The notes under the pieces are model-generated. The model was not told the DNA's origin. It saw nothing but the letters and a program-made list of their open reading frames with translations, and searched no databases. The position numbers were made by a program, and so were the translations under genes. From IMG/VR virus record IMGVR_UViG_3300049217_000071, positions 204,345 to 268,344 of that record: a stretch of 64,000 nt of DNA; one strand, 5' to 3'. Numbering within the stretch: the stretch's first letter is position 1; each line of letters starts with the position of its first letter. Positions 1-49,384 of this stretch are shown piece by piece.

Positions 1-2
1 TG

Positions 3-2282
3 TTAGGAATCCATCAAGCGGATCCTATCAAGTATAATCTGATCTTCGCCCGATTCCACAACAAGGAGAAGTCTAGCTTCCCAGATATTGATACGGACTT
101 TGCTCCATCAGGTCGTGAGAAAGTGCAGAACTATCTCCGACAGAAATATGGTGACGACCACGTAGCTCACGTGTCCAACGTCAATACCATTACGCCCAAA
201 GTGTATGCCAGAGATATTGCACGTGCTTGCGAACTAGGCGGTTCCAAAGATGAGGCGGTCAAGATTGGTAATGAGGTGGCAGACTGTTTGCCAGCCGAAA
301 TCCATTCCATCGATGAAGCTTTGACCAAAGTTCCTTTGTTTGCCGAGTATGTCAAGAAGTATCCTGAGTTTGAGAAATACAAAGACATCTGTGGCAAGTA
401 TCGTGCTTGGTCTACTCACGCAGGTGGTATCGTTATCTCAGCCCGTCCTTTGACCGGATTGGTGCCGCTCAGAAAAGATAAGGATGGCGCTCTCGCTATT
501 GAGTATGATAAGGATAAGGCCGAAGAAAACGGTCTGGTCAAGATGGATACCTTGGGCCTTTCTACCCTGGATATCATTGGTCAAACTATGCAACTGATCA
601 AGGAAGCTGGTAAGCCATTGCCTGCTGAACCTATGGATTATGATGTGTATGACAAGGAAACCTATGACGTCATTTCTGGTGGCGATACCTTCTGCGTTTT
701 CCAGTTGGGAACCAGCGGAGGCACGGTGGATTTGTGCCGTCGTATCAAGCCTAACAGCATCAATGATTTGGCCAACATCAACGCTTTGGCCAGACCTTCC
801 GCTCGTGATATGCGCAATGACTTTATCAAGACGCGTAATGGGGAAAGGCCTATGTCTCTCTTGCACCCCAACCTAGGCCGTGCTTTCAATAGCACCTACG
901 GATTCGGTTTGTATGAAGAGTGTTTGATGTATCTGGCTCAGGATATTGCCGGTTGGAGTTTGCATTCGGCTGACCGTTTGCGTAAGCTGACCAAAGAAAA
1001 AGGCAAGAACCCCAAGAAGGCTCAGGAATGGAGAACAGAGTTCATCAATGACGCTGTCAAAAACAATGTCAATGAAACCATTGCCAAGAGAATCTGGGAC
1101 GAAGTTGTGGATAAGTTCCAAGGCTACGGCTTCAACGTTTCTCACGCTGTGCTGTATTCGATGACTGGCTACAAGACGGCCTTTCTGAAAGCTCATTATC
1201 CAATTGAGTTTCTAATGGCCAACTTGATGGCGGAAGTCAAATCTAATACTCCTGATGCTAGAGGCAACATTGAGAAGATCAAGAAAGAGCTACGCAAGCA
1301 TCGTGTCAAGGTAGTGCCGCCCGATGTCAATAAGTCCCAACTGGTTTACACCATTGAAGATGGCAATCGACTCATCACCGGCTTGGATGCTATCAAGTTT
1401 GTGGGTGAGGACGCCATTAAAGACATTATCAGTAAGAGGCCCTTCAAGGACTTTTTCGATTTTATGGTGCGTGTCAGCTCTAAAGCTGTGCGAGCCAATA
1501 GCATTCAAGCTCTGGCTGCCTGTGGCGCCTTGGACTCTTTCAAGATTCCGCGTAAGCTAATGTTCTTGTATTGCTCGGACTATCGCAAGAAGCTACAAGT
1601 TTGGTTGAAGAAGCACGATCCCAATGTGGATCAGTTTGTGTATCCATATCCGTCCGAACCGGATTGGAGCGATCCTGAGCTATATGCTTTGGAACAGTAT
1701 TATTTGGGTGAGTCTTTCATCTGTCGACCGGCCCTGGCCTATGGCAATTTCTTCAAGGATGATCACAAGACAACCCAAGATGTCAAGAAGGCCAAAGACA
1801 AAACCAACGTCAGTTCTTTCAAGGGAATTGTGCGTAGCTTCTTTGAGTTCCGAGTCAAAAAGGAAACCAGTAAGTATTACGGCAAGCCAATGATCAAAGC
1901 TGTCTTGGAAGATAAGAATGGTGATCAATGCACCTGCACCATCTTCCCCGATCGTTGGGAAACGGTCAAGCAACGTATTCAGGAACTCAACAAGAAGGTG
2001 GAATTTGGGGTGGGCATTGCTCTGCACTTTGCTGGCAACACCAATAGCTATGAAGATTATATGGGTATCATCTTGGACAATCTGTTCAATATAGCTATTC
2101 CGCCTGGATTGCCGGTTGACTTGAAAGCCAAGAGAATCAATCTCAAGGAAGCTAGAGCCAAGCTTTCGCCGCAAGAGTTGGGTAAAAAGGTCAGAGATAT
2201 CAAGGACTTGTTTGAGGAAATTGAAGACGTCCTATATGACGAGGGCCTCATCGATTTAGAGGATGATCCCGAAGATGACTGA
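3..2282 (+). CDS. dnaE: DNA polymerase III alpha subunit (DnaE), 5'-truncated by the window edge
   Basis: The frame is open from position 3 and includes SFPDIDTDF (catalytic motif) upstream of the listed ORF. Also HAGGIVIS, KMDTLGL, GYGFNVSHA and a C-terminal OB-fold-like region. Confidence 0.95.
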   Translation, partial: LGIHQADPIKYNLIFARFHNKEKSSFPDIDTDFAPSGREKVQNYLRQKYGDDHVAHVSNVNTITPKVYARDIARACELGGSKDEAVKIGNEVADCLPAEIHSIDEALTKVPLFAEYVKKYPEFEKYKDICGKYRAWSTHAGGIVISARPLTGLVPLRKDKDGALAIEYDKDKAEENGLVKMDTLGLSTLDIIGQTMQLIKEAGKPLPAEPMDYDVYDKETYDVISGGDTFCVFQLGTSGGTVDLCRRIKPNSINDLANINALARPSARDMRNDFIKTRNGERPMSLLHPNLGRAFNSTYGFGLYEECLMYLAQDIAGWSLHSADRLRKLTKEKGKNPKKAQEWRTEFINDAVKNNVNETIAKRIWDEVVDKFQGYGFNVSHAVLYSMTGYKTAFLKAHYPIEFLMANLMAEVKSNTPDARGNIEKIKKELRKHRVKVVPPDVNKSQLVYTIEDGNRLITGLDAIKFVGEDAIKDIISKRPFKDFFDFMVRVSSKAVRANSIQALAACGALDSFKIPRKLMFLYCSDYRKKLQVWLKKHDPNVDQFVYPYPSEPDWSDPELYALEQYYLGESFICRPALAYGNFFKDDHKTTQDVKKAKDKTNVSSFKGIVRSFFEFRVKKETSKYYGKPMIKAVLEDKNGDQCTCTIFPDRWETVKQRIQELNKKVEFGVGIALHFAGNTNSYEDYMGIILDNLFNIAIPPGLPVDLKAKRINLKEARAKLSPQELGKKVRDIKDLFEEIEDVLYDEGLIDLEDDPEDD

Positions 2283-2423
2283 TATATATGATAAGAATCG
2301 ACACAGAAAATAACAAATAATAACAAAACCTACTAATAGTTGGTCATTTCGATATGCACGATGTCAAAAAGTGTTATATATGTGATGACACCAGGCTCTC
2401 TGGGAAATGATAAGAAAGTATTT

Positions 2424-3425
2424 ATGAAGCTGAATGATTGGGCCAAAAAGGCAGGAGTGAAGTATTTGACCGCTTACAGGTGGTTCAAGAACGGCACCCT
2501 ACCTGTGCCAGCTTATCAAACTGATTCAGGAACCATCATTGTGCAAGACAATTCTGAAGTATCGGAGCAAAATATGTCTGGCAACTCTGGTGATGCAATG
2601 TCCGTCTTATTGAAAAAGACGGTCGAGTTTAGTAAGAACAATTCTTCTATCGAAGACTTTGCCGCTTATGTTATTTCCAACTTTCAACTAAAATTGAATG
2701 GCACAGCTCCCGATGGTCCAAGATATTCCAAGAACAAGCCAAAGTCAGAAGATATACAGAAGCATTTTCAGCAGTTTATTCCTGATAAAGGAAAAGAAGA
2801 ACAGCTAAAGAGTATCAAAGCTCTTATCAAAGAACAAAACAAGGGAAAAGAAACTCTCTGTTATCCAGCCTCTGCTGTTGACAAGAGGATGAATGAAGAC
2901 AAACAAAATCTCGGCCAGCTACCAACCACCGATGATCTAGGATTTATCAGCTCTGATGAATTCGTAAGTGATGATCGTGTCGATGATTGGTGTGCCGGCG
3001 ATATTGTTGAAGGTTCGGTTACACAAAGTGTTGATTTAGATTCAACTCCACAACAAATCAACTATACTGGCTCTACTAATCTAGCCTTCAACAATAACTC
3101 TAATACTCTATCAGCCAATGATAACACTATGCCTGGCACCAACTTAGGCAGTAGTGGCACCGTATCTAGTGCTTTGGCCGATTATCGCACACTTGCTGCT
3201 GTTCTTGGTGGCACTGCAACTGCCTGTTCCGCTACCCCTTTTCAGGGCACGGCATCTTCCTGGGCCCCAACTGATGGTGGCGTTTATTTCAACTCGGTTC
3301 AGCAGTCGGCTACTCCCTTTATGCCTACCAAAAAGGAACTACAATCGGCTGTCAAGGTTATAGAAACGGCAGATACTGATCAACCACGTAGCAGACGCGG
3401 CCGTAAGCCGTTCAAGAAGGTATAA
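2424..3425 (+). CDS. Hypothetical protein with N-terminal IS607 TnpA-like HTH and low-complexity C-terminus
   Basis: MKLNDWAKKAGVKYLTAYRWFKNGTLPVPAYQTDSGTIIV resembles the MerR-like DNA-binding N-terminus of IS607 serine transposases. No serine-recombinase catalytic domain follows. The start could be further upstream (ORF open from 2340). Confidence 0.7.
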   Translation: MKLNDWAKKAGVKYLTAYRWFKNGTLPVPAYQTDSGTIIVQDNSEVSEQNMSGNSGDAMSVLLKKTVEFSKNNSSIEDFAAYVISNFQLKLNGTAPDGPRYSKNKPKSEDIQKHFQQFIPDKGKEEQLKSIKALIKEQNKGKETLCYPASAVDKRMNEDKQNLGQLPTTDDLGFISSDEFVSDDRVDDWCAGDIVEGSVTQSVDLDSTPQQINYTGSTNLAFNNNSNTLSANDNTMPGTNLGSSGTVSSALADYRTLAAVLGGTATACSATPFQGTASSWAPTDGGVYFNSVQQSATPFMPTKKELQSAVKVIETADTDQPRSRRGRKPFKKV

Positions 3426-3514
3426 TGACTAAGTTTATCAAGAAACATCCCTGGCTTTTATTTCAAGAAGGTATAATGACTAAGTTTATCAAGAAACATC
3501 CCTGGCTTTTATTT
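3411..3514. repeat. Perfect 51-bp tandem duplication spanning a stop/RBS/start junction
   Basis: ttcaagaaggtataatgactaagtttatcaagaaacatccctggcttttat occurs at 3411 and again at 3462; identity runs to 3514. Confidence 0.95.
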
Positions 3515-3994
3515 AAGTGCATTGCACTTACCTCCTGGTTTTGCGGCTTCTTGGCCAAGCATTTGACCAAAGCTATGCTCCTTTTGCTAGACCTCAAGAA
3601 TAAAGATCCTAACCCACCTCCGCCACCCGCTCCAAGAGAGCCTTCTTTCGAAGATCAGATGCAAACTACCGCTCAAAAAGGCAATCTCTTCTCCGTTGCG
3701 ACTCGTGAGAGACCTAAATTCAATTTCCCGTATATTCCTGAGTGGGTAGCCAAGTCTTTCAAGGATCATACTAAGCACCCGCTTCATAATGTGAAGTTGA
3801 AGCCACCATCATTTTTGCCAATGGCCTCCAAACCGGCTCCAGAAGCACCGCTGGCTCCTACCGTAGCTCTCGAAACCACGCTTGAGGTAGGACGTGCAGC
3901 GATTGATAATCTGCGCCAAGCTGTTTCCAATATAGAAAAGGCTGTAGAGCTACCACCAACCCGCAAACTCAAGAAATCAAGTAAGAAGGGCTAA
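3425..3994 (+). CDS. Hypothetical Pro-rich protein with possible N-terminal hydrophobic segment
   Basis: 189-aa ORF abutting both neighbours, with aagaagg before the ATG. The duplication gives a second in-frame start at 3476. Confidence 0.7.
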   Translation: MTKFIKKHPWLLFQEGIMTKFIKKHPWLLFKCIALTSWFCGFLAKHLTKAMLLLLDLKNKDPNPPPPPAPREPSFEDQMQTTAQKGNLFSVATRERPKFNFPYIPEWVAKSFKDHTKHPLHNVKLKPPSFLPMASKPAPEAPLAPTVALETTLEVGRAAIDNLRQAVSNIEKAVELPPTRKLKKSSKKG

Positions 3995-3995
3995 T

Positions 3996-5165
3996 ATGCA
4001 ATTACATCCTACTCAACTCGTCAAGACTTTTCTTCAGGACAAACCAGATTTAATGCAATCCTATGTGGATTGGGGAACTGTATTTGTGGAATACGCCCTT
4101 GCTCCTTTGGGAGGCATTCTATTGTATCTAATAGATGTGCAAGGATTAGACCCAAACACTTCATCTATCCAAAAGTATTGCCGAGAATTAGAAGAGGCTG
4201 TGGCTAATGTGCAAGACACCAAAGATTTCGATTCTGATTATGATCTTTCTTGGGTAACTAAGAAGTGGCAAGATGCCAATAGGGGACTGAAGGCTGTGCA
4301 ATTGACTCAGGAGAAATTCAGGGAACTAACTGATTTGAGCGATATAGCAGATAAGCCGGCCGAAGTAGTCGTCAATGGTCGAGTAGCAGACAGTGAGGAT
4401 GAGTTCTTTGCCAAATGCACCGAAATCAACCGTGTAGCGCCCCCTGCCCCAAAGCGAGAAATTCCTATCACCACTGAAGAGCAAGAAGCTCGTGATCAGC
4501 GTAAGCGCGATGTTCTAGAAAAAATGAAAGCCAAGATAGATTTGAGCAGCAAGTATGGTCGTCAAGAGTATAGAAAAGTGGTAGCAGAAGAGGATATCTT
4601 GGACAATAATACCAAGTTCAATCCAGGTGGTTTTATGGAAGACAAGCTTAATGAATTAGAAGAGCTACTTCAAAAAATGGAAAAGGACTCTCCTCCAAAG
4701 TCTAAGCCAACCAAGAAGGCTAACAAGATTACTAAGGTCAATCGAATCAATAAGCGCCCTTTCATCAAGAAGGAGCCGGCTACTCGTTTGTCCGATGATA
4801 ATCTGTTGCGTGCCGAGAAGTTAGCTCGTGAAATGGTGGTCAAGGGGCTTTGCGATGACAACAATGTTGCCATTGAAGCACAGATTGCTGAATTGGCTAG
4901 TCTCTCGAAGCCTTTAGAGGATTTGGCAAAGATTATCAAACGTCATACGCCCAAGATACAGTTTTCCAAACGGGCTCATAAAGAAGCAGAGGAGATACAA
5001 ACCCTAATCAAAAAGGGTCATTTAGATCCGAAAGATTTAGATGAACTGGTAAACAATGGTGCTCGTCAAGAAAGTGTTGATTGTTGGAAGCAACAACATA
5101 ATCACGAGTATAATGAAGCTACCAAGTTCAAGGGCAACTTCAGAAGGTCTCCTTCCAAAGGATAA
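3996..5165 (+). CDS. Hypothetical protein; C-terminus paralogous to the protease-scaffold C-terminus
   Basis: RAEKLAREMVVKGLC...RHTP and HKEAEEIQTLIKKGHLDPKDLDELV...W align by eye with segments of 34805..38494. Confidence 0.75.
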   Translation: MQLHPTQLVKTFLQDKPDLMQSYVDWGTVFVEYALAPLGGILLYLIDVQGLDPNTSSIQKYCRELEEAVANVQDTKDFDSDYDLSWVTKKWQDANRGLKAVQLTQEKFRELTDLSDIADKPAEVVVNGRVADSEDEFFAKCTEINRVAPPAPKREIPITTEEQEARDQRKRDVLEKMKAKIDLSSKYGRQEYRKVVAEEDILDNNTKFNPGGFMEDKLNELEELLQKMEKDSPPKSKPTKKANKITKVNRINKRPFIKKEPATRLSDDNLLRAEKLAREMVVKGLCDDNNVAIEAQIAELASLSKPLEDLAKIIKRHTPKIQFSKRAHKEAEEIQTLIKKGHLDPKDLDELVNNGARQESVDCWKQQHNHEYNEATKFKGNFRRSPSKG

Positions 5166-5167
5166 TT

Positions 5168-5626
5168 ATGCCAATCAGAAGAGTCAAGCAATATTCCGAT
5201 CGCGGAAGTATCAAGAACCTGCACAACGAGGACGATGACAACTATCCTCCGACTGATTTAGAGCTACGACTTAAGCAACTGTATGAGCGTGCCGTAGAAA
5301 CCAGAGACCAGGGCCTATCGGATTCCTTAGGTTTCATTACGATGAATAGTAAATCTATTGATCCGGTATCTGTTTATAGACACCGAGAATATGTTGAGTC
5401 TCTAAAGTCTAAACTAACTACTACTGAAAATATGAAGCAGATAGTGGATGCTATGCCCTTTGTTGACCCAGCGCTCGCTTGCCATCCACTTTCTCTATCC
5501 GATATCAGGAAAGCGCAGGCCAACTCTACTTACGCCATTCATCGAGTAGAAGAGTTTGTCAAGACGGCTGACGCCAATGGAAACATTTCCCACCGCAGCC
5601 TTAGAAGTTTTAGAAGAGTGAGTTAA
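5168..5626 (+). CDS. Hypothetical protein
   Basis: 152-aa ORF tightly packed between neighbours on the coding strand. Confidence 0.7.
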   Translation: MPIRRVKQYSDRGSIKNLHNEDDDNYPPTDLELRLKQLYERAVETRDQGLSDSLGFITMNSKSIDPVSVYRHREYVESLKSKLTTTENMKQIVDAMPFVDPALACHPLSLSDIRKAQANSTYAIHRVEEFVKTADANGNISHRSLRSFRRVS

Positions 5627-5627
5627 T

Positions 5628-6455
5628 ATGAAGTGTATAAGCTGTGAAACAGAAATCAATCCAAAGTGGAAACACGCCATTGATATCAACGTCTGCCCTT
5701 TTTGTGGACAGAACATTCTCGAAGAGCATCTCAAGAACTTGTTGGCGGATCTAGCCAAAACGATGCTCGCTTTGCAACAGTATCCTGATCAAGTCAATGA
5801 TTGGCTGCTCTCTAACTACAACTATGTCAAGACCGACTCCCCAGATCTAGCCTCTTTCATTCCAAAGGATACTATCAAGGAACTTCGTAAGGCCATTGAT
5901 GATGAAGAGTTTGAGAATAAGAAGCGCACTATCAAAGTCAAGACCGCTGACGGGGAACAGGAGGTGGAGGTGCAAAAGATTCAATCTGATGCGAAAACCA
6001 ACTCCTTTTTCGAGCGAGCCGAAGCCCTCCGAGATCCTCCCAAGAAAAAAGGAGAGGAGCCGGAAGCCCCTAAAAGTATTGCCGAAAAGACTCAGCATAT
6101 TAAGCAAATGGCGCAGCGAATCAAAAAAGAAGCCTCCCAAGGTATTGTCGGCCAAGCTGACCTGGCATCTATGATGTCGGCCGAGGGCGGTGGTGAAGTA
6201 GAAAATCCTGAGTTCGTGGCCGAATTACAGTCCGTGCTTTCGGGCGGTGATATAGTCAGTTCAGCCTTGCCAGAACCGGCCGGAGGTGACGATGACGTTA
6301 TTCCGGGTGCCGAGAATGTAGTTTCTAGAATGGCTAATATGGTGGGTAACAAGACTACAGCTCAAGAACGCGATATGAAGACTTTGCAGGAAATGCAAAA
6401 CAGAGTGCAGAACACCTCTAAGAAATTGGGTAAGGGTGGTTTCAGTCGAGCTTGA
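5628..6455 (+). CDS. Hypothetical protein with N-terminal Zn ribbon
   Basis: MKCISC...CPFCG at the N-terminus; charged, probably disordered remainder. Confidence 0.75.
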   Translation: MKCISCETEINPKWKHAIDINVCPFCGQNILEEHLKNLLADLAKTMLALQQYPDQVNDWLLSNYNYVKTDSPDLASFIPKDTIKELRKAIDDEEFENKKRTIKVKTADGEQEVEVQKIQSDAKTNSFFERAEALRDPPKKKGEEPEAPKSIAEKTQHIKQMAQRIKKEASQGIVGQADLASMMSAEGGGEVENPEFVAELQSVLSGGDIVSSALPEPAGGDDDVIPGAENVVSRMANMVGNKTTAQERDMKTLQEMQNRVQNTSKKLGKGGFSRA

Positions 6456-6476
6456 TTTTCAGAAAGAGTAAGTGCA

Positions 6477-6767
6477 ATGGGAATCCGAGTAGTCGACAAC
6501 AAAAAGCTGGATATGACGGATGATGAGTGGACGATGTATCAGCAAATCATCAAGTCTTACACAACCCTCAGTAATAAGGGCGAAGACCTTTTTATGGAGC
6601 TTTTCGAAACTGATGACGAAGGAATTATTGTCTTTCTTAGGCCACCTTCCAAACGTCAAACCAGCTTGCAGGTCTTCCTCTTTTTGATGGCCCTGATGCA
6701 GCACCAACACCTGCGATCTATGCGGAAACAGGTGACCGAAGCCATCGCGGAAATGAAGAAGAAATAA
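6477..6767 (+). CDS. Hypothetical protein
   Basis: 96-aa ORF in operon position. Confidence 0.7.
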   Translation: MGIRVVDNKKLDMTDDEWTMYQQIIKSYTTLSNKGEDLFMELFETDDEGIIVFLRPPSKRQTSLQVFLFLMALMQHQHLRSMRKQVTEAIAEMKKK

Positions 6768-6835
6768 GCGCGTTCATTAGTTTATTTTGTCGAGATAAAG
6801 TTCGTTATATTACGTATTACAGAAAGAAGACAGAC

Positions 6836-7345
6836 ATGAGCCAACAAGTAAGACTTGGTGATTTGATAGGTTCTAACCCTGAGGAAGACTTCAGGAATTT
6901 CGACCTCACCGAGGTGCAGCAAGTGCTGAACCAACTTCAACAGGTAGACGCCATTGACTTGGCGCACGCAGAATTTTTACAGCAACAAGCATTGAGAGGA
7001 GCCGACATCCTGGTAGAGTTTATGGCCAAGGTTGTCAAGACAGTAGGATATCTAGAAGCGAGAGTAAATAGCACGAAGAACAAAGTATCATTAGAATATG
7101 TGGCACCGGACGGTGCACGAACGACAGCAGATATGAAAAGATGGGCAGCCGATACATCGCCCGAAGTAGAAAATGTGCAAAACAGACTAGCAGAAGCCAA
7201 GGGAGCCAAGGTTGCCCTGGAACGAAAATTCGATATAATCGTCAAAGCCCATCATCATTATAAAGACATTGCGACCGGGCTGCGCAAGACGATCCTCGGA
7301 TATAGTTCAGACATCAACGAAAAGGCGCCCGAAGGCTACGAATGA
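6836..7345 (+). CDS. Helical protein, possibly a UvsY-like recombination mediator
   Basis: Predicted all-helical 169-aa protein immediately upstream of RecA. The function is inferred from size, composition and position only. Confidence 0.4.
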   Translation: MSQQVRLGDLIGSNPEEDFRNFDLTEVQQVLNQLQQVDAIDLAHAEFLQQQALRGADILVEFMAKVVKTVGYLEARVNSTKNKVSLEYVAPDGARTTADMKRWAADTSPEVENVQNRLAEAKGAKVALERKFDIIVKAHHHYKDIATGLRKTILGYSSDINEKAPEGYE

Positions 7346-7356
7346 TGGGAGATAAA

Positions 7357-8559
7357 ATGTCAGATGATAAGAAAAAGAAAGACGATAAGCTAACCGCGTT
7401 TTTCCGAAGTTTCGCCGAAGCTGATGCTGAATTGGATTTCAAGATGGCTCACGAAATGGTGGGCGCCAAATTGCCAGGTAGTTCAACTGGTTCATTAGCA
7501 TTAGATGATGCGTTATCATCTGGTAATCTGCCAAAGGGCAGGCTCTTTCAATATTACGGTCCCACCGGTTCTGGTAAGACGCTGATGGCGATGCTAGCCC
7601 TCAAAGAAGCTCAGATTGCGGAACCAGGCACTCAGCAAGTTTTTATCGATGCTGAAGGCACTTTCGATTCTAATTGGGCAGAGGCTCTAGGATTAGACAC
7701 TTCTAGGATCATCCATATCTTCGGTGAACAAGCCGTCAACGGACGTGATTGTTTCGAGATGCTTTTGGGTGTTCCCAAAGAAGATAAGAAGACTCACGAG
7801 TTGGTCGGCAAAAGCAAGGAAGGTTTGCTAGACAACATTATGAACGGTACCTTCAACATCAATTTCGTGGTGTTGGATTCTCTGGGCGCCATCATCCCGC
7901 CAGGGGAAGATATCTCCCGAGTTGGTAAGATGAATATGGCCTTGCAGGCTAGATTCCTTACTACTACTTTCCGTAAGCTGTCTCTAGACGCCAACAAGGC
8001 TCAAGTCCCCTTTATTTTCATCAACCATCAGAAAGCTGGTATGGATCCTTACGGACCTGACCACACCTTCTCGGGTGGTAATAGCTACGCTCACTTTTTG
8101 TCTGCCAACATCTATTTCGAGGCAGTGCAGAGAGCAGACGCTCAGATTCTAGATGCCAAGGAGCAGAAAATTGGGCATACGATGCGCGCCACTATTGAAA
8201 AGTCCAAGTTTGGACCGTGGCCAAGAAAATGTGAATTCAAGGTAAACTTCGGAATCGGTGTTATAGACAGGCACGAGGAAATCGCCCAACTGGCCGTGGA
8301 TTACAACGTCGTTGTCAAGACGTCCACTGTCTCCCATGAATACGGAGATAAAAAGTGGGTAGGCTTTCCCAAGTTTTGTGAAGCAGTAAAAGAGGACCAA
8401 AACTTTGCGAATGAACTAGTTGTCAAAATTAGTGCAGCTCGTGAAGCAAAATGGGAAACAGCACGTAAAGAACAAGAAGCAAAAAAGAATGCCCTACTTG
8501 GAGTTGCAGTATCTGAAGAGGATATTGAAGCTTCTAAGAAAGGTAAGAAGGGTAAGTAA
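7357..8559 (+). CDS. recA: RecA/UvsX-like recombinase
   Basis: Walker A YYGPTGSGKT, FIDAEG, Walker B VVLDSLGA, IFINHQ, KSKFGP. RBS gggag precedes the ATG at 7357. Confidence 0.93.
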   Translation: MSDDKKKKDDKLTAFFRSFAEADAELDFKMAHEMVGAKLPGSSTGSLALDDALSSGNLPKGRLFQYYGPTGSGKTLMAMLALKEAQIAEPGTQQVFIDAEGTFDSNWAEALGLDTSRIIHIFGEQAVNGRDCFEMLLGVPKEDKKTHELVGKSKEGLLDNIMNGTFNINFVVLDSLGAIIPPGEDISRVGKMNMALQARFLTTTFRKLSLDANKAQVPFIFINHQKAGMDPYGPDHTFSGGNSYAHFLSANIYFEAVQRADAQILDAKEQKIGHTMRATIEKSKFGPWPRKCEFKVNFGIGVIDRHEEIAQLAVDYNVVVKTSTVSHEYGDKKWVGFPKFCEAVKEDQNFANELVVKISAAREAKWETARKEQEAKKNALLGVAVSEEDIEASKKGKKGK

Positions 8560-8561
8560 TA

Positions 8562-8939
8562 ATGCCAAGTGATATTGCCGTTGGGGCTAATATAAATACT
8601 CCAGAAGGGGCGTTTGCAGTTCTCCCCCGAGGAGCCGCACAACTCAAGAAGCCTCCCTATCTAATTACATTGATAGAGACCAGCGGCAAAACGCAAACAG
8701 TTTCCAGGTTCGTATCTTTGGATAAACCAGAACTCCAGAATGGGTTTATTCAAGTTAGAGGAATCTTTTGCGACAAAGCGGAAGACGTAATTGTCAAAAG
8801 CTTTCAAGACATCTTGACGACTGAACCCAAGGAATCAATCTTGGAGATGATGTTTCCCATCCATAGAATACACAGCATTAGAAGTTTAGTGTATAGTGCT
8901 GTCAAAACGCTAACACCAACTAAGCAAGAAGGAAAGTGA
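8562..8939 (+). CDS. Hypothetical protein
   Basis: 125-aa ORF, operon-packed. Confidence 0.7.
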   Translation: MPSDIAVGANINTPEGAFAVLPRGAAQLKKPPYLITLIETSGKTQTVSRFVSLDKPELQNGFIQVRGIFCDKAEDVIVKSFQDILTTEPKESILEMMFPIHRIHSIRSLVYSAVKTLTPTKQEGK

Positions 8940-9277
8940 GCAGTATAATGAAGAGCAATGTGAGGAAAGTTTATCTAGGAACTGTGTGGCCAGATAATAT
9001 AGATGTGAATGAATTAACTTTTACGAAGCTTATTACGGTAATAGAAAACCTCTCTGGGAGAACCTGGACCGGCACGATGACTAATTTGACGACAGCTCTG
9101 AACAAAGTTTCGAGTCGCAATCAAAGAAATCTTCTACCCCGTTCCCCAGGTGCTCTGAGAGTGGTGATAAACAGAATAGCCAACAGGCTACGCAACAGAG
9201 GTATTGGCGTCAAGTTTGCACGTACCACTGATCACGCAAGAACACGCACCGTAAGATTTACACGCACATCATTCTGA
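8936..9277 (+). CDS. Small basic protein, possible stand-alone winged-helix DNA-binding domain
   Basis: WTGTMTNL...LPRSPGALRVVINRIANRLRNRGIGVKF resembles the C-terminal wHTH of phage/plasmid primase-helicases (recognised by eye). Confidence 0.45.
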   Translation: MSSIMKSNVRKVYLGTVWPDNIDVNELTFTKLITVIENLSGRTWTGTMTNLTTALNKVSSRNQRNLLPRSPGALRVVINRIANRLRNRGIGVKFARTTDHARTRTVRFTRTSF

Positions 9278-9311
9278 TGTGATGAATAGATTACGATCGA
9301 TGTTTGTTAAG

Positions 9312-9340
9312 TAGATAGTAAACGTACCTTTGTGTACAAT
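9312..9340 (+). promoter_or_regulatory. Sigma70-like promoter for the SSB-like gene
   Basis: TAGATA (9312-9317), 17 nt, TACAAT (9335-9340). RBS aggag lies downstream. Confidence 0.45.
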
Positions 9341-9364
9341 AGAAAATAACAGTTAGGAGATCAT

Positions 9365-10072
9365 ATGACTACATTCGGTGAAATTAATTGGAGTGATGAC
9401 GTTTTTGGTGGCCAAGATGGCAAAAAGAACACCAACTCTAAGGACCTGTTCCTTAGACTAGATGAAGGCCCAAACGAGGTGAGACTGATTACTCAGCCTT
9501 TCCAGTATTTGGTCCACAAGTACAAGAAGGCTGATGACACTGGCTTCGGTCAGAAGGTCCCATGCTCCGCTATCCACGGAAGCTGCCCGCTCTGTGCTAT
9601 GGGCGACAAGGCCAAGCCACGTTGGTTGCTCGGTGTAATTAGCCGCAAGACCAACACCTACAAGATCTTGGACATTTCTTTCGCTGTTTTCGGACAGATC
9701 AGAAAGTACGCTAAGAACGCTGCTCGTTTTGGTGATCCAACCAAGTACGATATCAACATTGAGGTGGATAAGAACGGTGGAGCCACTGGCTACTACTCAG
9801 TTCAAGCGCTCAATAAAGAAGCTCTTTCCGCTACGGATCAAGACATCAAAGACAAAGTTGACTTCGATGATTTGAAGCGTAGGGTCACTCCTCCAACTCC
9901 TGACATCGTTCAGAAGAGAATGGATAAGATTGACGGCGTTGCTACCCCAGCAACCGGAACTGCCCCAGCTTCGGCTGCCAAGAAAGCTGCGCCTAAGGCT
10001 GCAACCCCTCCAGTTAGCATGACTGATGAAGAGACTTTAGATGAGTCCTTCCCCGCTCATGATGCATCATAA
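9365..10072 (+). CDS. Phage single-stranded DNA-binding protein (gp32-like, Zn-binding)
   Basis: FLRLDEGPNEVRL, CSAIHGSCPLC, KYDINIEV, acidic/flexible C-terminal tail. Located between RecA and the resolvase; strong RBS. Confidence 0.7.
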   Translation: MTTFGEINWSDDVFGGQDGKKNTNSKDLFLRLDEGPNEVRLITQPFQYLVHKYKKADDTGFGQKVPCSAIHGSCPLCAMGDKAKPRWLLGVISRKTNTYKILDISFAVFGQIRKYAKNAARFGDPTKYDINIEVDKNGGATGYYSVQALNKEALSATDQDIKDKVDFDDLKRRVTPPTPDIVQKRMDKIDGVATPATGTAPASAAKKAAPKAATPPVSMTDEETLDESFPAHDAS

Positions 10073-34804: not shown

Positions 34805-37800
34805 ATGACCATAATCAAACTGGGCGAAGCACACGAAATCAAACTAGAGTCGGCGGAGTCCTGTATTCCAGAAGTGAGCCCCGAGGTTCTAGAGAACTTT
34901 AGGAAGTTTGCTCAAAACCTCAAGAAGATCGCCCCTAAGGCTGAAGACTTCTTGTATTTCTCTGCCGTTATGATGCATGCTGCCGAGGCCTCTTGTCTCA
35001 ATGACGATGGCACTCCTAAACTAAATGTTCGAGGTGAAGCTGTCCAAGTAGGCTGGGATACCAGTAATGGAACTTGGAAATGGACTACCAATGATCCTAG
35101 CATTAAGCCTTATAAGAATTCTAATGGGGATATCTTCCCAGAATTAGAGTTAATCAAAGCTTACAAGAAATGGAAGCACAAGCCCCTCTGCGTGGATCAT
35201 AAATCGAATTCGGTTGATCACGTCAGGGGCTTTATTGTTGATACTCACTACGATCGTAATCTCAAAAGAGTGATCGCATTATGTGCCTTAGATAAGGCTG
35301 GGTTTCCTCAACTAGCTCGTCAAATTTCTACTGGCGTTTCTAACTGCGTATCTATGGGTACGGCAGTGGGTCGTGCCATTTGCTATGATTGTCAAAGAGT
35401 CGCCCGCACGGAAGCCGATTTCTGCACTCATATGAAGAACAAGTCTTGCTACGGTGAAATAAACGTAGACCTCAATCCTATTGAACTTTCGATTGTGGTC
35501 AACGGTGCCGATCCTAGAGCCAGCATCAAGCATATTATCGCCGCAGCAAATACTCTTAATACCTATGTGGAGAATAAACAAAAGGAATTAGCTAAGTTAG
35601 CTGATCTTAACTTCAATGCTTCATTAAGTGTTGATGACCCACAAGGACAAGAAGGTTTGAGCCATACTCAGTTTCAAGTCAATGGCAATAATCTAGAAAA
35701 GTTCAAAGCTGACCTAGATCAAGCCTTTGCTAAACTATCTGAAATAGCCGGTACCGTAAAAAATACTGAAAAAGATACTAATCTTTCTGCATCTAATCAG
35801 TCGTCGGGTTCAATTGCGATGGATGAAGGCGCCCCGACTGATTCTGGATTGGCTCTCCAAACTCCGCAGACTGCAAGGTTTGCATCAGCAAGTGTAGAGG
35901 CGGAATCTCTAGCTGAACTTCACGAAATAACAGCCACTATTGAAGCAAAGCTAAATCAAATGAAGCAGGGCTTAGAAAAACTAGCAGCTACTTCTACAAA
36001 AACACAAGAGGAAAATATGTCTGGATCAGAAAAACTAAAAGCACAAGGTTATTTCCAGGGCGCTGGTGGTGTTAACGAGCCTACTCCAGGCCAAGTTAAG
36101 TACCCTAAGGACCCACTTAATGAGCAACTTCGTGAACACGAAGACAAGCAGATGGTGGGCGAGCCTCCTTTCCCAGAAGTGGGACCAGTGGACGGCATGC
36201 ATCCTTCTCCAAGTTCGGCTGATCCTTCCGACGAGTTAGCTCGTAAGAAGATGTTAGCTCGTGCTGATCTAGAAGAGCGCGCTATGAAGCGTAATGCCAT
36301 CGTTCAGTTGGCAAAAGAAGCTCTAGAGAGCAAGTCTTACTTTCAAGGTGGCGGTGGCGTCAATGAGCCAACCCCAAACAAGCCAAAGTATCCAAAGGAC
36401 AAGCTCAACGAAGAGCTACGTGAATACGAAGACAAGCAAATGGTTGGTCAACCACCATTCCCAGGCGTAGGTCCTGTCGACGGTCTTCACCCATCCCCAT
36501 TCTCCGCAGATCCAAAGGATGAATTGAAGCGTAAGAAAATGCTCGCCAGAGCTTCCTTGAGAGCCAGATTCGTCAAGGCTGCCAATGGTGACGGTACCCA
36601 GAACAAGTCCAAGAGTGCTTGGGAAGTTTTCCTAGGCGACAAGCTCCTATTGACTGCTTCTGTCGATGAACTATCCGGTGGACACACCGACATGTTGTAT
36701 GACAGCATTGCTACCAAGGAATTTGGTGGTAAATTGATCGAAAAGGTCAAGGTCAATGGTGCTCCAGCCGTAGCCCAACTAATCAAGAAGGCTCAGCCTA
36801 TGCCTCCAGCCCCTCCGGGTGGTGATGCAGGTGCCCCTCCAGAAGCTCCAGACCCAGATGCTGGTCCTCCAGTAGAAGATGCTGGTAAGTCTGGTGATCC
36901 AAAGCAACACGCTATGGAATTGGCTAAGACAGTTAGAGACACTGCCTCCGATTTGATGGAAGCTGTTCGCGCCCTTACCGGCGAGAGCGCTGAAATGGGT
37001 GGTGAAGGTTCTAGCGCACCAGAAGGTGGCGTTGGTGGACCAGCAGGTGGACCAGCCGCGATGGCTGATGACTCCTCAGGTTCCGGCTCTGCTACAGGCA
37101 AGACCTCTACCGCTGAAGGTTTTAGTACTGCAACTCTCAATAACTTGAGAAAGGAACTCAACAGTTCTCTAACTCTCGCTATGAAAGAAGCTGTCGCTGA
37201 ACTCAACGATCACGGTCAAGAATTGGACATGATTGTCAGCATGTACGACAAGGGTGCTGTTACCGATCAAAACTCTGACTTCGTCAACAACGTCGTAACC
37301 GACGCCTTGAATGAAGCCAAGACTACCGTGGCTGACGGATTCAAGCTAATGACCGCTTTCGTCAAGTATGCCCGTGGTACTCAAGCTATTGTCAAGCGTG
37401 CTGAGATCGAAACCGAACTTCAAGCACTTGCAACTGAAGGAGATACTATGAGCGATACAAAAGATAGTCACTCCGCAGATGGCGGTGACTTAATGGGACT
37501 AATCAACGACACCAACGCAGATCTAGACGCTGTCAAGATGATGGTTGATGATAATGACCACGAAGGTGGCATGGAAGGACTAGATGACTTAGATGACTTA
37601 GGTGATCTAGGACTCGATGGTCTATCCGAAGGTTTAGTTGATGATAACGCTGGTGTGATGGTTGATACCCCAGCCAAAGCCGCAGAGGTTACCAAAATGA
37701 ATCCAGATGCTAGTGTAAAAGTTGCCTCCTTTGATACCAAAGAGGGCCGCGCAGCTCTAAGAGCCAAGTTGGCCGCTGATGCTACCGGCAAGGAAGAGAA

Positions 37801-38494
37801 TGGAGAAATCCAGGATGCTTCCAAGATTAAGTTCAGTGATATGTTGGATCAAGCCGACAAGTTGACTGATGGTCAAACTCAATTGGATGTTAAGCCATCC
37901 GATAGTCTTGGATTGGTAGAAACTCTACCAGAAGTTAATAAGGCTATGTTGGAACTTGCTAAGGCTCCACCAAACGTCCGTAAGGAAGCTGCTGCAATCC
38001 AGAAACTCGTTTCTGAAGGCAAGCTAGATCCAAAGGATGTGGACGCTCTAGTCGCAGAAGGTCTAGACAAGGAAGCTGTCTCTTACTGGAAGAAATACTA
38101 CGGTGAAGTTGATGGTGGCGGTGAATTTGCCAGTGAATTGGTGAAGGAACATGTCAAGTCCGCAATGGCCGAAGAACTAAACCAGTTCAGAGTCAAGCTA
38201 GCTCGTGCCTACGAATTAGCTTATGATATGGCTGACCGTGGACTATGTCATCACGAAAGACCAGCAATTAGCGCTCAAGTGGATGAAATCATGAAGTTCA
38301 ATGATGAATCCTTTGACTCTCTCAAGAGAGTAGTTGCTCGTCACACTCCATTACTTCACAAGGAAGCTGGACGTATCCCACAAGTTGGTTTGAGAGGTGA
38401 TCAAGATGTCACCCCATCTACCCAAGCAGTGGTTGAAGAGGATGCATATGCACAGCTATCTTCAATGTTCGGCACCAAACGCGGTGTGTTCTAA
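34805..38494 (+). CDS. Prohead (capsid maturation) protease fused to a long scaffold-like region
   Basis: N-terminal PLCVDH...RG, VSMG and ELSIVVNGADPRA resemble the HK97/herpes-type (clan SH) protease signature. About 1000 aa of helical and low-complexity sequence follow. Confidence 0.8.
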   Translation: MTIIKLGEAHEIKLESAESCIPEVSPEVLENFRKFAQNLKKIAPKAEDFLYFSAVMMHAAEASCLNDDGTPKLNVRGEAVQVGWDTSNGTWKWTTNDPSIKPYKNSNGDIFPELELIKAYKKWKHKPLCVDHKSNSVDHVRGFIVDTHYDRNLKRVIALCALDKAGFPQLARQISTGVSNCVSMGTAVGRAICYDCQRVARTEADFCTHMKNKSCYGEINVDLNPIELSIVVNGADPRASIKHIIAAANTLNTYVENKQKELAKLADLNFNASLSVDDPQGQEGLSHTQFQVNGNNLEKFKADLDQAFAKLSEIAGTVKNTEKDTNLSASNQSSGSIAMDEGAPTDSGLALQTPQTARFASASVEAESLAELHEITATIEAKLNQMKQGLEKLAATSTKTQEENMSGSEKLKAQGYFQGAGGVNEPTPGQVKYPKDPLNEQLREHEDKQMVGEPPFPEVGPVDGMHPSPSSADPSDELARKKMLARADLEERAMKRNAIVQLAKEALESKSYFQGGGGVNEPTPNKPKYPKDKLNEELREYEDKQMVGQPPFPGVGPVDGLHPSPFSADPKDELKRKKMLARASLRARFVKAANGDGTQNKSKSAWEVFLGDKLLLTASVDELSGGHTDMLYDSIATKEFGGKLIEKVKVNGAPAVAQLIKKAQPMPPAPPGGDAGAPPEAPDPDAGPPVEDAGKSGDPKQHAMELAKTVRDTASDLMEAVRALTGESAEMGGEGSSAPEGGVGGPAGGPAAMADDSSGSGSATGKTSTAEGFSTATLNNLRKELNSSLTLAMKEAVAELNDHGQELDMIVSMYDKGAVTDQNSDFVNNVVTDALNEAKTTVADGFKLMTAFVKYARGTQAIVKRAEIETELQALATEGDTMSDTKDSHSADGGDLMGLINDTNADLDAVKMMVDDNDHEGGMEGLDDLDDLGDLGLDGLSEGLVDDNAGVMVDTPAKAAEVTKMNPDASVKVASFDTKEGRAALRAKLAADATGKEENGEIQDASKIKFSDMLDQADKLTDGQTQLDVKPSDSLGLVETLPEVNKAMLELAKAPPNVRKEAAAIQKLVSEGKLDPKDVDALVAEGLDKEAVSYWKKYYGEVDGGGEFASELVKEHVKSAMAEELNQFRVKLARAYELAYDMADRGLCHHERPAISAQVDEIMKFNDESFDSLKRVVARHTPLLHKEAGRIPQVGLRGDQDVTPSTQAVVEEDAYAQLSSMFGTKRGVF
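36050..36555 (+). repeat. Two copies of a ~75-aa module (288-nt period) inside the protease-scaffold
   Basis: YFQG(A/G)GGVNEPTP...KYPKD.LNE.LRE.EDKQMVG.PPFP.VGPVDG.HPSP.SADP.DEL.RKKMLARA occurs twice. Confidence 0.95.
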
Positions 38495-38524: not shown

Positions 38525-39307
38525 ATGAAAAACCAAAGCGTATCAGATTTTGTCGCTGCAACTATGGATGCAGTGCTAAACAGCCCAGAACACAAAGCCT
38601 TGTTCGGCTCCCAATACAAGTATGCACAGTCCAAGGATGCTATGTGCGCCAAGCACGGCAAAATGGACTCTTGCGCAGCCGATGATCAAGATGCCAAGAA
38701 GAAGGACTCTAGCTCTGCCTCTGACATGAACGATGCCAGAAAAGTAAAGAAGTATGACTCTTCTGATGCAGATGACCAGGATGCTAAGAAGAAAGACTCT
38801 TCCGATGCTGATGATCAAGATGCTAAGAAGATGCCACCATGGCTAAAGAAGAGGGACGAATCTTCTGCTGACGATCAAGATGCCAAGAAGAAAGATTCTT
38901 CTGACGCAGATGATCAAGACGCCAAGAAGAAAGACTCTTCCGATGCTGACGATCAAGATGCCAAAAAGAAGGACTCTTCTGACGCTGATGATGACGACCT
39001 AGAGGCTTCTGCCGCTTTTGATATTGCTATCGATAGTTTGCTCACCGCCTCCGCCGCTCTTGATTCCGTGGGTCTCGGTAAGGGCTCTTCAGTTATCTTG
39101 AAGGTAGCTTCTTTGGTTGTTGAAGCCAAGAAGAAGGAAAAGGATTCCAAGAAAAAGAAGAAGGAAGACTCTAAGAAGAGTGATTCCAAGAAGTCTTCTA
39201 CCAAGGATTCTCAATCCGCTAAGGACAAGAAGTCTCCTCCAAAGAAAGACTCCAAGAAGGATGAGAAGAAATCCTCTTCCAAGCCTTCCTCTTCTTCCAA
39301 GAAGTAA
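38525..39307 (+). CDS. Low-complexity charged protein (possible DNA-condensing core protein)
   Basis: DSSDADDQDAKKK repeats and a Lys/Ser-rich C-terminal tail; RBS gagga. Confidence 0.8.
   Translation: MKNQSVSDFVAATMDAVLNSPEHKALFGSQYKYAQSKDAMCAKHGKMDSCAADDQDAKKKDSSSASDMNDARKVKKYDSSDADDQDAKKKDSSDADDQDAKKMPPWLKKRDESSADDQDAKKKDSSDADDQDAKKKDSSDADDQDAKKKDSSDADDDDLEASAAFDIAIDSLLTASAALDSVGLGKGSSVILKVASLVVEAKKKEKDSKKKKKEDSKKSDSKKSSTKDSQSAKDKKSPPKKDSKKDEKKSSSKPSSSSKK
38680..39000 (+). repeat. Coding tandem repeat, 39-nt/13-aa unit (DSSDADDQDAKKK)
   Basis: Six ADDQDAKK copies plus degenerate ones, with synonymous divergence. Confidence 0.9.
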
Positions 39308-39433: not shown

Positions 39434-39994
39434 ATGAATACAACCATCTGTTCAATATATAAAATTGTCAATAATATGGACGGCAATGTATATATTGGGC
39501 AAACATGGATTCCTGTTCAAGCTAGATTTAGGAGGCACAAGTATGCTTCCAGTAATTGCATCAAGCTTGCAAGAGCCATAAAAAAGTACGGAGAAGATAA
39601 CTTCAAAGTCGAACTAATTACTGTCTGTGGCACCCAAGAGGTTGCAGATTATTTGGAAGCCTATTTTATCAACAAATTTGACTCTATCAGGAGTGGATAC
39701 AACATACTGGCTGGTGGTAAGACAAGTAGCAGAAGGGGAGCAAAACACTCCCAAGAAACTAAGGATAAACTGTCAAAATTAGCCACAGGGCGTAGGCACT
39801 CGATCGAGACAAAAGAAACTCTGTCCGCACTAAGAAAAGGCATTCCACTCTCGATCGAACATAGATCCAAGTTATCAGAGGCTAAGAAAGGCAAAAAGTT
39901 CACCGAAGAGCATAAATCTAAATTACTTGGAAATCATAAGGGCATGACGTGGAATATAGTAGACGGCAAAAGAGTGTGGATGGAGAAACGATGA
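39434..39994 (+). CDS. GIY-YIG homing-endonuclease-like protein
   Basis: SIYKIVN...VYIGQT, conserved Arg and Glu, GYN, NUMOD3-like H(S/T)xETKxKLS repeats. Confidence 0.9.
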   Translation: MNTTICSIYKIVNNMDGNVYIGQTWIPVQARFRRHKYASSNCIKLARAIKKYGEDNFKVELITVCGTQEVADYLEAYFINKFDSIRSGYNILAGGKTSSRRGAKHSQETKDKLSKLATGRRHSIETKETLSALRKGIPLSIEHRSKLSEAKKGKKFTEEHKSKLLGNHKGMTWNIVDGKRVWMEKR

Positions 39995-49370: not shown

Positions 49371-49384
49371 GTTTGTCGTATGGT

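What the first reader, a model, noticed from the sequence alone, without database searches (positions are those of the whole stretch)
3996..5165. Permuted paralogue of the scaffold C-terminus sitting in the replication block
Two segments match the end of the protease-scaffold 33 kb away, but in swapped order. Segment A: RAEKLAREMVVKGLCDDNNVAIEAQIAEL...IIKRHTP (from 4809) vs RAYELAYDMADRGLCHHERPAISAQVDEI...VVARHTP (from 38204). Segment B: HKEAEEIQTLIKKGHLDPKDLDELVNNG..ESVDCWK (about 4978-5090) vs RKEAAAIQKLVSEGKLDPKDVDALVAEG..EAVSYWK (about 37976-38090). The scaffold has B then A; this protein has A then B, joined near the KEA present at both places. Scaffold C-termini generally bind coat protein. 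This could be an early-expressed assembly modulator, a capsid-targeting tag for an unrelated N-terminal domain, or a decoy that interferes with competing related phages.
Basis: partly seen in the sequence, partly recalled or inferred. Interest (0 to 1): 0.72.

Follow-up and report, generated by a model that had tools for sequence, protein, structure and literature searches.

The report
Replication-block protein carrying shuffled scaffold modules
A gene sitting among the replication genes of a huge phage related to Bacillus phage G really does carry two small helical modules copied from the end of the head-scaffold protein, but these are independent, freely shuffled building blocks of a fast-evolving protein family (relatives also carry a copy of the capsid protein's own N-terminus), which points to a protein that docks into the assembling head.

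Summary
ORF 3996..5165 (389 aa) matches the C-terminus of the protease-scaffold fusion (34805..38494) in two segments, in swapped order. BLASTP gives E=4e-8 (A) and 1e-8 (B); shuffle z-scores are 16 and 20. A and B are unrelated to each other, and there is no DNA-level similarity.

It is not a circular permutation. The ORF belongs to a family of at least 248 clusters in phage-G-like megaphages, with this layout:
- a conserved ~115-aa N-domain of unknown fold;
- a basic linker;
- optional A and/or B modules;
- a near-invariant basic tail (KFKGxFRR).

Seven orders of A, B and tail occur among the relatives, besides forms with neither module. So A and B are autonomous modules. The family-wide shared element is A (hhalign 98%, E=4e-14).

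45 of 160 relatives, though not this ORF, also carry a module homologous to the capsid protein's N-terminal extension. The reciprocal HMM finds only the capsid protein in this genome (E=5e-12).

Most likely mechanism (inferred, ~50%): the family docks into the procapsid by mimicking both sides of the scaffold-capsid interface. Binding is untested. The N-domain function is unknown.

The parts
3996..5165 (+). ORF P0001 (389 aa), member of a modular family of phage-G-like megaphages
   Evidence: 248 representative clusters at E<=1e-3; synteny kept between DNA polymerase and UvsX
3996..4355 (+). Conserved N-domain (about residues 1-120; motifs GLDPNT, D.DYD[LF]SW, LT..F..LTDLS), acidic, fold and function unknown
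   Evidence: alignments A1/A2/A4; no Pfam, PHROG, PDB-sequence or Atlas match; AF2 pLDDT about 50
4608..4691 (+). Helix at the position where relatives carry module M (capsid-protein N-terminus-like); not detectably M here
   Evidence: M found in 45 of 160 relatives but not in the P0001 clade; AF2 helix 211-230 at low confidence
4686..4781 (+). Basic, probably disordered linker (residues 231-262, pI 10.8)
   Evidence: AF2 pLDDT <50 for 232-265
4803..4952 (+). Module A (residues 270-319), three short helices, homologous to scaffold residues 1128-1182
   Evidence: (hhalign 98.2%, E=3.9e-14); AF2 helices 265-282, 290-301, 307-316 with pLDDT 70-84
4980..5093 (+). Module B (residues 329-366), three short helices, homologous to scaffold residues 1059-1100; lies between A and the tail in this clade
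   Evidence: (HMM E=4e-12)
5124..5147 (+). Near-invariant basic C-terminal tail KFKGNFRR
   Evidence: the same kind of tail ends the next two genes
34805..38494 (+). Protease-scaffold fusion P0002 (1229 aa), the stable home of B then A
   Evidence: 314 homologues, C-terminal 190 aa 65-81% identical
37979..38104 (+). Scaffold module B (residues 1059-1100)
   Evidence: AF2 pLDDT 60-65
38186..38350 (+). Scaffold module A (residues 1128-1182)
   Evidence: AF2 pLDDT 87-90; also present in phage G gp21
49466..50479 (+). Major capsid protein (337 aa from the ATG, not the upstream TTG)
   Evidence: homologues 86-97% identical, nearly all 335-339 aa
49475..49564 (+). Capsid-protein N-terminal extension (residues 4-33), the prototype of module M found in relatives of P0001
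   Evidence: (reciprocal HMM E=5e-12, the only significant hit in the genome)
5168..6455 (+). Two downstream genes (152 aa and a 275-aa zinc-ribbon protein) ending in the same kind of tail (..SFRRVS, ..GKGGFSRA)

Best explanation
ORF 3996..5165 belongs to a fast-evolving, modular protein family confined to environmental relatives of Bacillus phage G. Every member has a conserved N-domain of about 115 aa and unknown function, and most complete members end in a basic tail (consensus KFKGxFRR). Between the two lie a basic linker and an optional set of small helical modules. A and B are homologous to the two conserved modules at the C-terminus of the protease-scaffold fusion. M, found in many relatives, is homologous to the N-terminal extension of the major capsid protein. 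The modules are autonomous and have been lost, kept or rearranged many times. The window's A-then-B order is one such arrangement, not a circular permutation.

Shown: the homology, the modularity, the distribution and the synteny.

Inferred: in tailed phages and herpesviruses the scaffold C-terminus contacts the capsid protein, often its N-arm. The family therefore carries copies of one or both sides of that interface and uses them to dock into the assembling procapsid. It would bind the capsid shell through A/B as the scaffold does, and in relatives bind the scaffold core through M as the capsid protein does. That would take the N-domain and the basic linker inside the head as a passenger or auxiliary core component. 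What the N-domain does afterwards is unknown.
For: Homology of A and B.

Autonomy and shuffling:
- A-only, B-only, B-A-tail, A-B-tail, A-tail-B and B-tail-A members exist.
- A protein with three tandem A modules and no N-domain exists.
- At least 23 architecture changes occur on the N-domain tree of 86 complete members.

The scaffold is the stable home of the modules. There are 314 homologues with the C-terminal 190 aa 65-81% identical, all those examined in B-A order. The A module is also present in gp21 of cultured phage G, two genes after its protease.

Third head-assembly module:
- The HMM of the capsid-protein N-terminus hits the middle of relatives (best E=6e-8).
- An HMM built from family segments alone gives one significant hit in the six-frame ORFs of this genome, the capsid-protein N-terminus (E=5e-12; the next best is E=0.5).
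- In record G012 one 262-aa protein has M immediately followed by A.

The capsid protein is 86-97% identical across the clade. Modules that bind it, or the scaffold, would therefore stay compatible when shuffled.

Precedent: the 80alpha scaffold and SaPI1 CpmB share a C-terminal helix-and-hook that binds the capsid-protein N-arm (PMC5644958). T4 propeptides target proteins into the prohead core (PMC10052503).
Against: - No binding has been shown or predicted for any module.
- The window's own protein has no detectable M module.
- The gene lies in a tightly packed operon with replication and recombination genes, not in the head block.
- The conserved tail is shared with the next two genes of that operon, not with the scaffold: the scaffold-tail HMM finds nothing in the family. 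This points to a partner outside the head.
- The family was not found in five related records, two of them >=97% complete. That is a weak negative.
- No virion proteome exists for any member.
- Phage G, the only cultured relative, seems to lack the family.
Confidence: 0.5

Rival explanations
1. Assembly modulator or decoy. By copying the scaffold's C-terminal modules (and, in relatives, the capsid protein's N-terminus), the protein competes for the scaffold-capsid interface. It would delay or tune head assembly while replication proceeds, or poison assembly of co-infecting relatives or satellites, without being a stable head component.
For: - Same module evidence as above.
- The gene sits in a replication operon, probably expressed before the head genes.
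- Evolution is very fast: about 30% identity between genomes whose capsid proteins are about 90% and scaffold ends about 75% identical. Architectures also turn over quickly, as expected for conflict genes.
- CpmB competes with the 80alpha scaffold in exactly this way.
Against: - The capsid protein is nearly identical across the clade, so a decoy would hit the phage's own assembly as much as a competitor's.
- The gene is a syntenic core gene of the phage, not a satellite gene.
- Many members have neither A nor B.
Confidence: 0.2
2. A and B are generic protein-protein or oligomerisation modules with a partner outside the capsid shell, such as a chaperone, the membrane, DNA or each other. The scaffold and this replication-block protein share them for that reason. 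The protein's real job would lie with the replication/recombination cluster, together with the two neighbours that share its C-terminal tail.
For: - Operon context and the shared tail in three consecutive genes, conserved in G001 and G002.
- A strongly acidic conserved tail on the adjacent DNA polymerase.
- A basic linker.
- A triple-A protein in a non-head context.
- No fold match tying A or B to any known capsid-binding domain.
Against: - It does not explain why relatives also carry a copy of the capsid protein's N-terminus.
- In the scaffold, A and B lie in its most conserved part, at the end that binds capsid protein in other systems.
Confidence: 0.2
3. True circular permutation. B-A in the scaffold and A-B here are one fold unit rearranged by duplication (B-A-B-A) and truncation, with the RKEA-like stretch after the scaffold's A as a remnant of the second B.
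For: Swapped order. An RK.AG stretch is conserved after A in scaffolds and resembles the RKEA start of B.
Against: - A and B occur separately and in other positions, including B after the tail.
- Distant family members have A followed directly by the tail.
- The remnant is only 4 residues.
- AF2 models them as two separate three-helix units.
Confidence: 0.05
4. Chance similarity between helical, charged, low-complexity segments.
For: Both proteins are helical and rich in charged residues.
Against: E=1e-8 and 4e-8 with composition adjustment; z=16-20 with 0 of 2000 shuffles reaching the score; profile-profile E=3.9e-14; conserved signature positions such as M..[RK]GLC and Q..E[IL].
Confidence: 0.01

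Closest known systems
SaPI1 CpmB versus the phage 80alpha scaffolding protein (PMC5644958)
   Same: A second protein carries a copy of the scaffold's C-terminal capsid-contacting element on a different N-terminal part. The copy lets it occupy the scaffold's site on the capsid-protein N-arm.
   Different: CpmB is encoded by a satellite and shares only the last ~16-21 residues (helix-and-hook, RIIK). Here the gene is a syntenic gene of the phage's own replication block. The shared elements are two ~40-55-aa helical modules upstream of the extreme C-terminus, and the extreme tails are not homologous. Relatives add a capsid-protein N-terminus mimic. Binding and any size redirection are untested.
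T4 capsid-targeting sequences on internal proteins (IPI-III, Alt) and propeptides of giant-phage head proteins (background knowledge; PMC10052503)
   Same: Short portable elements direct otherwise unrelated proteins into the prohead core. Module M ends in a conserved L-E-[EDN], reminiscent of the T4 gp21 L/I-x-E cleavage context (inference only).
   Different: T4 targeting sequences are ~10-20 aa at the extreme N-terminus and are not copies of the scaffold or capsid protein. Here the modules are internal or C-terminal and are recognisable paralogues of scaffold and capsid-protein segments.
Nested or fused protease-scaffold genes (lambda C/Nu3, P2 gpO, herpesvirus UL26/UL26.5; background knowledge)
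   Same: Two proteins share the same scaffold C-terminus, which contacts the capsid protein. P0002 is itself a protease-scaffold fusion.
   Different: There the sharing comes from in-frame nested translation of one gene. Here it is an old paralogy between genes 33 kb apart with no DNA similarity.
Encapsulin cargo-loading peptides (background knowledge)
   Same: A short C-terminal peptide anchors cargo to the inside of an HK97-fold shell. This is conceptually like a docking role for the conserved tail or modules.
   Different: No sequence relationship was tested or claimed. The tail here is shared with neighbouring replication-block genes rather than with head proteins.

Membership tests
Circularly permuted single domain | The two swapped segments form one obligate fold unit and always occur together | tested here: not met
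   A-only (27+ members), B-only (5), B-A, A-B, A-tail-B and B-tail-A architectures exist. AF2 gives two separate three-helix units.
Circularly permuted single domain | Same segments in swapped order with significant similarity | tested here: met
Phage scaffolding protein | Encoded in the head-morphogenesis block next to protease/capsid genes | tested here: not met
   The gene lies between DNA polymerase and UvsX, 30 kb from the head block. The same synteny holds in relatives.
Phage scaffolding protein | C-terminal region that binds the major capsid protein | not testable with these tools
   Modules homologous to the scaffold C-terminus are present, but binding is not established for the scaffold or for this ORF.
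CpmB-type competing scaffold of a satellite | Shares the scaffold's extreme C-terminal capsid-binding motif | tested here: not met
   Sharing concerns A and B. The HMM of the scaffold's last 47 residues finds nothing significant in the family.
CpmB-type competing scaffold of a satellite | Encoded by a satellite or other parasite of the phage | tested here: not met
   Conserved position inside the phage's replication operon in at least four of the records examined.
T4-type CTS-bearing internal head protein | Short N-terminal targeting peptide removed by the prohead protease | tested here: not met
   The N-terminus is the conserved N-domain. The head-related modules are internal or C-terminal. 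Cleavage is not testable.
T4-type CTS-bearing internal head protein | Protein present in proheads or virions | not testable with these tools
   No proteome is available. The cultured relative phage G appears to lack the family.
The family defined here (N-domain / linker / optional M, A, B / basic tail) | N-domain matching the family profile | tested here: met
   P0001 is the first row of profiles A2 and A4. 83 clusters match at E<=1e-30.
The family defined here (N-domain / linker / optional M, A, B / basic tail) | C-terminal tail F.G.F[RK]R | tested here: met
   KFKGNFRR at residues 377-384

The most novel reading that the evidence does not exclude
The family is a bivalent mimic of the scaffold-capsid interface. 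It carries the capsid protein's N-terminal peptide (M) and the scaffold's C-terminal modules (A, B) on one chain, which implies that M and A/B are each other's natural binding partners. Encoded in the replication/recombination operon, and sharing a docking tail with two neighbours, it would physically couple genome replication or recombination to procapsid assembly. Alternatively it would act as a rapidly evolving weapon against the assembly of co-infecting relatives. No such kind of phage protein has been described.
Probability: 0.15. Interest if true: 0.85.

Novelty: new variant of a known kind. Interest (0 to 1): 0.64.

Why it matters
How very large capsids (phage G is T=52) recruit their many internal components is poorly understood, and portable 'address labels' are known for only a few model phages. 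This family offers a natural experiment: three small, recognisable modules copied from the scaffold end and the capsid-protein N-terminus, attached in many combinations to one N-domain.

If the modules are docking elements, they do three things:
- They define the scaffold-capsid contact of a whole clade of ~450-500-kb environmental phages from sequence alone.
- They predict a specific peptide-domain interaction (M with A/B) that can be tested with small recombinant pieces.
- They could serve as tags for loading cargo into HK97-fold shells.

If the protein is instead a regulator or decoy, it would be the first phage-encoded, rather than satellite-encoded, competitor of its own scaffold.

Tried and rejected
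- **Complex prediction.** Capsid protein (alignment A5) with P0001 residues 255-389 (alignment A6) scored 0.24 against a mark of 0.32. No verdict was given and the controls were not run. This is no evidence either way.
- **Fold searches of the scaffold C-terminus model.** Foldseek against PDB gave nothing at E<=0.001. VIA-align wide gave a best Z of 5.7, within the noise for helical models.
- **Whole-protein AF2 of P0001.** Mean pLDDT was 57.6 and the N-domain was not modelled, so no fold search was run on it.
- **Function of the N-domain.** Pfam, PHROGs, PDB sequences by profile, and the ESM Atlas by features and structure gave no usable hit.
- **Recent duplication or gene conversion.** There is no DNA similarity between the two genes. 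Own-genome against other-genome identity of A modules in 8 genomes was 0.373 against 0.366, permutation p=0.27. An earlier impression that the P0001-clade A is closer to its own scaffold is therefore not supported.
- **Repeated recent capture of A from scaffolds.** Family A modules and scaffold A modules fall on opposite sides of one branch (SH-aLRT 95, quick tree, long branches). One old origin followed by losses is the simpler reading. The B tree is unresolved (support 14).
- **A and B as repeats of each other.** z<1.
- **M module in the window's own protein.** Not detected by HMM or by hhalign.
- **Transmembrane helix in the N-domain.** Hydropathy is borderline (median 1.3; conserved charged residues inside), so none is claimed.
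- **Promoter and terminator scan of 1..9500.** Counts were at the shuffle expectation.
- **Genomic context of the triple-A protein P0261.** Uninformative.
- **tblastn of P0001 against cultured phages.** No match.

Full report
**Setting.** The window is the last 64 kb of a 268-kb IMG/VR virus record (linear, CheckV completeness 62%). Its major capsid protein is 54% identical to that of Bacillus phage G. Its protease matches phage G gp19 best among cultured phages. The scaffold and capsid genes have hundreds of close homologues on environmental contigs of 330-510 kb. This is therefore an uncultured phage-G-like megaphage.

**The observation.**
- ORF 3996..5165 (P0001, 389 aa) and the 1229-aa ORF 34805..38494 (P0002) share two segments in swapped order. 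Segment B covers residues 329-369 against 1060-1100 (49% identity, E=1e-8). Segment A covers residues 270-344 against 1132-1201 (34% identity, E=4e-8).
- Against 2000 shuffles the local alignment scores lie 15.9 and 19.9 standard deviations above the mean. A against B is at background in every combination.
- No DNA similarity remains, so the relationship is old.
- P0002 has a head-maturation-protease N-terminus. It lies between terminase/portal (25607.., 27567..) and the capsid protein.
- P0001 lies between a DNA polymerase and a UvsX-like recombinase, a possible SSB (weak match) and a RuvC-like resolvase. Gene spacing is 1-2 nt, suggesting one operon.

**The family.**
- A word-based search found 12 relatives. 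In the distant ones A is followed directly by a near-invariant tail (KFKGSFRR) with no B.
- In five related virus records the scaffold C-terminus is 70-79% identical to the window's. The P0001 orthologue, by contrast, is only about 30% identical and matches the scaffold in A alone.
- Profile-profile comparison of the family (A2) with 61 scaffold C-termini (A3) gives one match, module A, at 98.2% probability and E=3.9e-14.
- An exhaustive HMMER search with the family profile found 248 representative clusters, 83 of them at E<=1e-30.

**Module architectures.** HMMs of scaffold A and B were scored on the 160 members held. 59 have A and 18 have B. Seven orders of A, B and tail occur, besides forms with neither module:

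| Architecture | Examples |
|---|---|
| N-tail | many short members |
| N-A-tail | commonest long form |
| N-B-tail | P0180, P0195, P0200, P0204 |
| N-B-A-tail (scaffold order) | P0155, P0162, P0176 |
| N-A-B-tail | window's clade; P0166, P0189 |
| N-A-tail-B | P0147, P0175 |
| N-B-tail-A | P0229 |
| three tandem A modules, no N-domain | P0261 |

- On a tree of the N-domain (86 complete members) the architecture changes at least 23 times.
- A and B are therefore autonomous modules. The window's order is one of several arrangements, not a circular permutation of one domain.
- AF2 agrees. In P0001 only residues 265-370 are modelled with pLDDT above 70, as two groups of three short helices. In the scaffold C-terminus, A has pLDDT 87-90.

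**Origin of the modules.**
- The scaffold is the stable home. All scaffold homologues examined have B then A, with 65-81% identity.
- Phage G's gp21, two genes after its protease, carries an A module (E=2.7e-5).
- In a tree of A modules, the family's copies and the scaffolds' copies fall on opposite sides of one branch (SH-aLRT 95). This is a quick tree with long branches, so the support deserves caution. One old capture followed by losses is the simplest reading.
- The B tree is unresolved.
- Own-genome pairs of A modules are no more alike than cross-genome pairs (p=0.27, 8 genomes). There is thus no sign of gene conversion.

**A third module.**
- While reading the middle regions I noticed a motif (LKDAL..L.KYA..LEE) that also opens the capsid protein.
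- The capsid protein starts at the ATG at 49466 (337 aa), not the TTG of the mechanical ORF list. Homologues agree.
- An HMM of its first 60 residues hits the middle of many family members, between the N-domain and the basic linker. The best E-values are 6e-8 to 1e-5 in a set of 160 sequences.
- An HMM built only from 22 family segments gives a single significant hit in all six-frame ORFs of this genome: the capsid-protein N-terminus (residues 4-33, E=5e-12). The only other row is at E=0.5.
- 45 of 160 members carry this module M.
- In record G012 one 262-aa protein has M immediately followed by A and the tail.
- The window's own clade has no detectable M. The helix at residues ~205-232 sits in the equivalent place but cannot be called M.
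- Phage G's capsid protein lacks this ~42-residue extension.

**Interpretation.**
- In systems where it is known, the scaffold C-terminus binds the capsid protein, in 80alpha its N-arm. SaPI1 CpmB exploits this by carrying the same C-terminal element (PMC5644958). T4 propeptides target proteins to the prohead core (PMC10052503).
- A family that collects copies of the scaffold's conserved end and of the capsid protein's N-terminus is most simply a family that docks into the assembling head.
- That step is inference. No binding has been shown, and the window's protein has only A and B.
- The operon context points the other way. The conserved tail is shared not with the scaffold but with the next two genes..SFRRVS at 5168..5626 and ..GKGGFSRA at 5628..6455. 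This holds in G001 and G002 too, and no other ORF in those 12-21-kb stretches has it. The tail probably serves a partner common to this small cluster.
- I put the docking reading at about 0.5, a modulator or decoy at 0.2, a non-capsid partner at 0.2, true circular permutation at 0.05 and chance at 0.01.

**Novelty.** Sharing a scaffold's capsid-binding end with a second protein is known from CpmB and from nested protease-scaffold genes. Four things are new here:
- the shared elements are modular and shuffled;
- a capsid-protein N-terminus copy occurs in the same family;
- the gene sits in the phage's own replication operon;
- the family is widespread in a clade of huge environmental phages.

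The N-domain has no match in Pfam, PHROGs, PDB or the ESM Atlas.

**Limits.**
- Module detection relies on scaffold-derived HMMs at E<1e-2. Very divergent copies may be scored as absent, although protein lengths agree with the calls.
- Some representatives may be truncated at contig ends; only members with a tail were used for the tree.
- The absence of the family from five related records and from phage G rests on a filtered search and is weak.

Noticed in passing
window 3996..6455; L007 10001..12451; L009 10001..12379; L011 9983..12297: Three consecutive genes end in the same kind of basic tail ([GS].F[RS]R): the P0001 family, a ~150-aa ORF and a ~280-aa N-terminal zinc-ribbon protein. No other ORF >=90 aa in these stretches has it. 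The adjacent DNA polymerase ends in a conserved, strongly acidic tail. This may be a shared docking peptide for one partner.
   Followed up: partly
window 49466..49600 (capsid-protein N-terminus); relatives P0171, P0188, P0154, L109 ORF from 1495: The capsid protein has an N-terminal extension of ~42 residues that phage G lacks. A copy of it (module M) sits in the middle of 45 of 160 P0001-family members. It ends in a conserved L-E-[EDN], possibly a prohead-protease site.
   Followed up: yes
window 3411..3514: Perfect 51-bp tandem duplication (2.0 copies, 100% identity) across the stop of ORF 2340..3425 and the start of ORF 3425..3994. It duplicates the ribosome-binding site, the start codon and the first 13 codons. 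It may be a recent duplication or an assembly artefact.
   Followed up: partly
window 42549..47060: Four tandem ORFs of 361-387 aa between the scaffold and the capsid protein. The two scanned against Pfam and all four against PHROGs gave no match. Possibly paralogous head proteins.
   Followed up: no
window 39434..39994 and 41753..42472: Two likely homing endonucleases inside the head-gene block. The second is confirmed as GIY-YIG by PHROGs; the first is judged from its sequence only. Some scaffold homologues elsewhere (P0100, P0105; ~1570 aa) carry intein-type Pfam domains.
   Followed up: no
window 36040..36600 (P0002 residues ~415-600): The scaffold has an internal tandem duplication of ~95 aa (YFQG.GGVNEPTP ... 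KKMLARA, twice). The N-terminus of phage G gp21 resembles one unit.
   Followed up: no
window 38525..39307: 260-aa protein just after the scaffold with 39-bp repeats encoding DADDQDAKKKDSS units and a lysine/serine-rich end. No family match.
   Followed up: partly
NC_023719.1 18268..19728 (L021 8269..9729): Phage G gp21 (486 aa, unannotated) carries an A module. It resembles the window's scaffold at its N-terminus and at its extreme C-terminus. It is probably phage G's scaffold, separate from the protease gp19.
   Followed up: partly
G006 186219..187230 (L103, L106): The P0001 orthologue is split into two ORFs: an N part of 244 aa and an A+tail part of 129 aa. This may be a frameshift, a sequencing error or a real split.
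   Followed up: no
P0261 (L124 8001..9035): A 344-aa protein made of three tandem A-like modules without the N-domain, on a 23.7-kb contig among unrelated large-phage genes.
   Followed up: partly
window 49373..49465: The mechanical ORF for the capsid protein starts at a TTG 31 codons upstream of the real ATG. Homologues (nearly all 335-339 aa) support 49466.
   Followed up: yes
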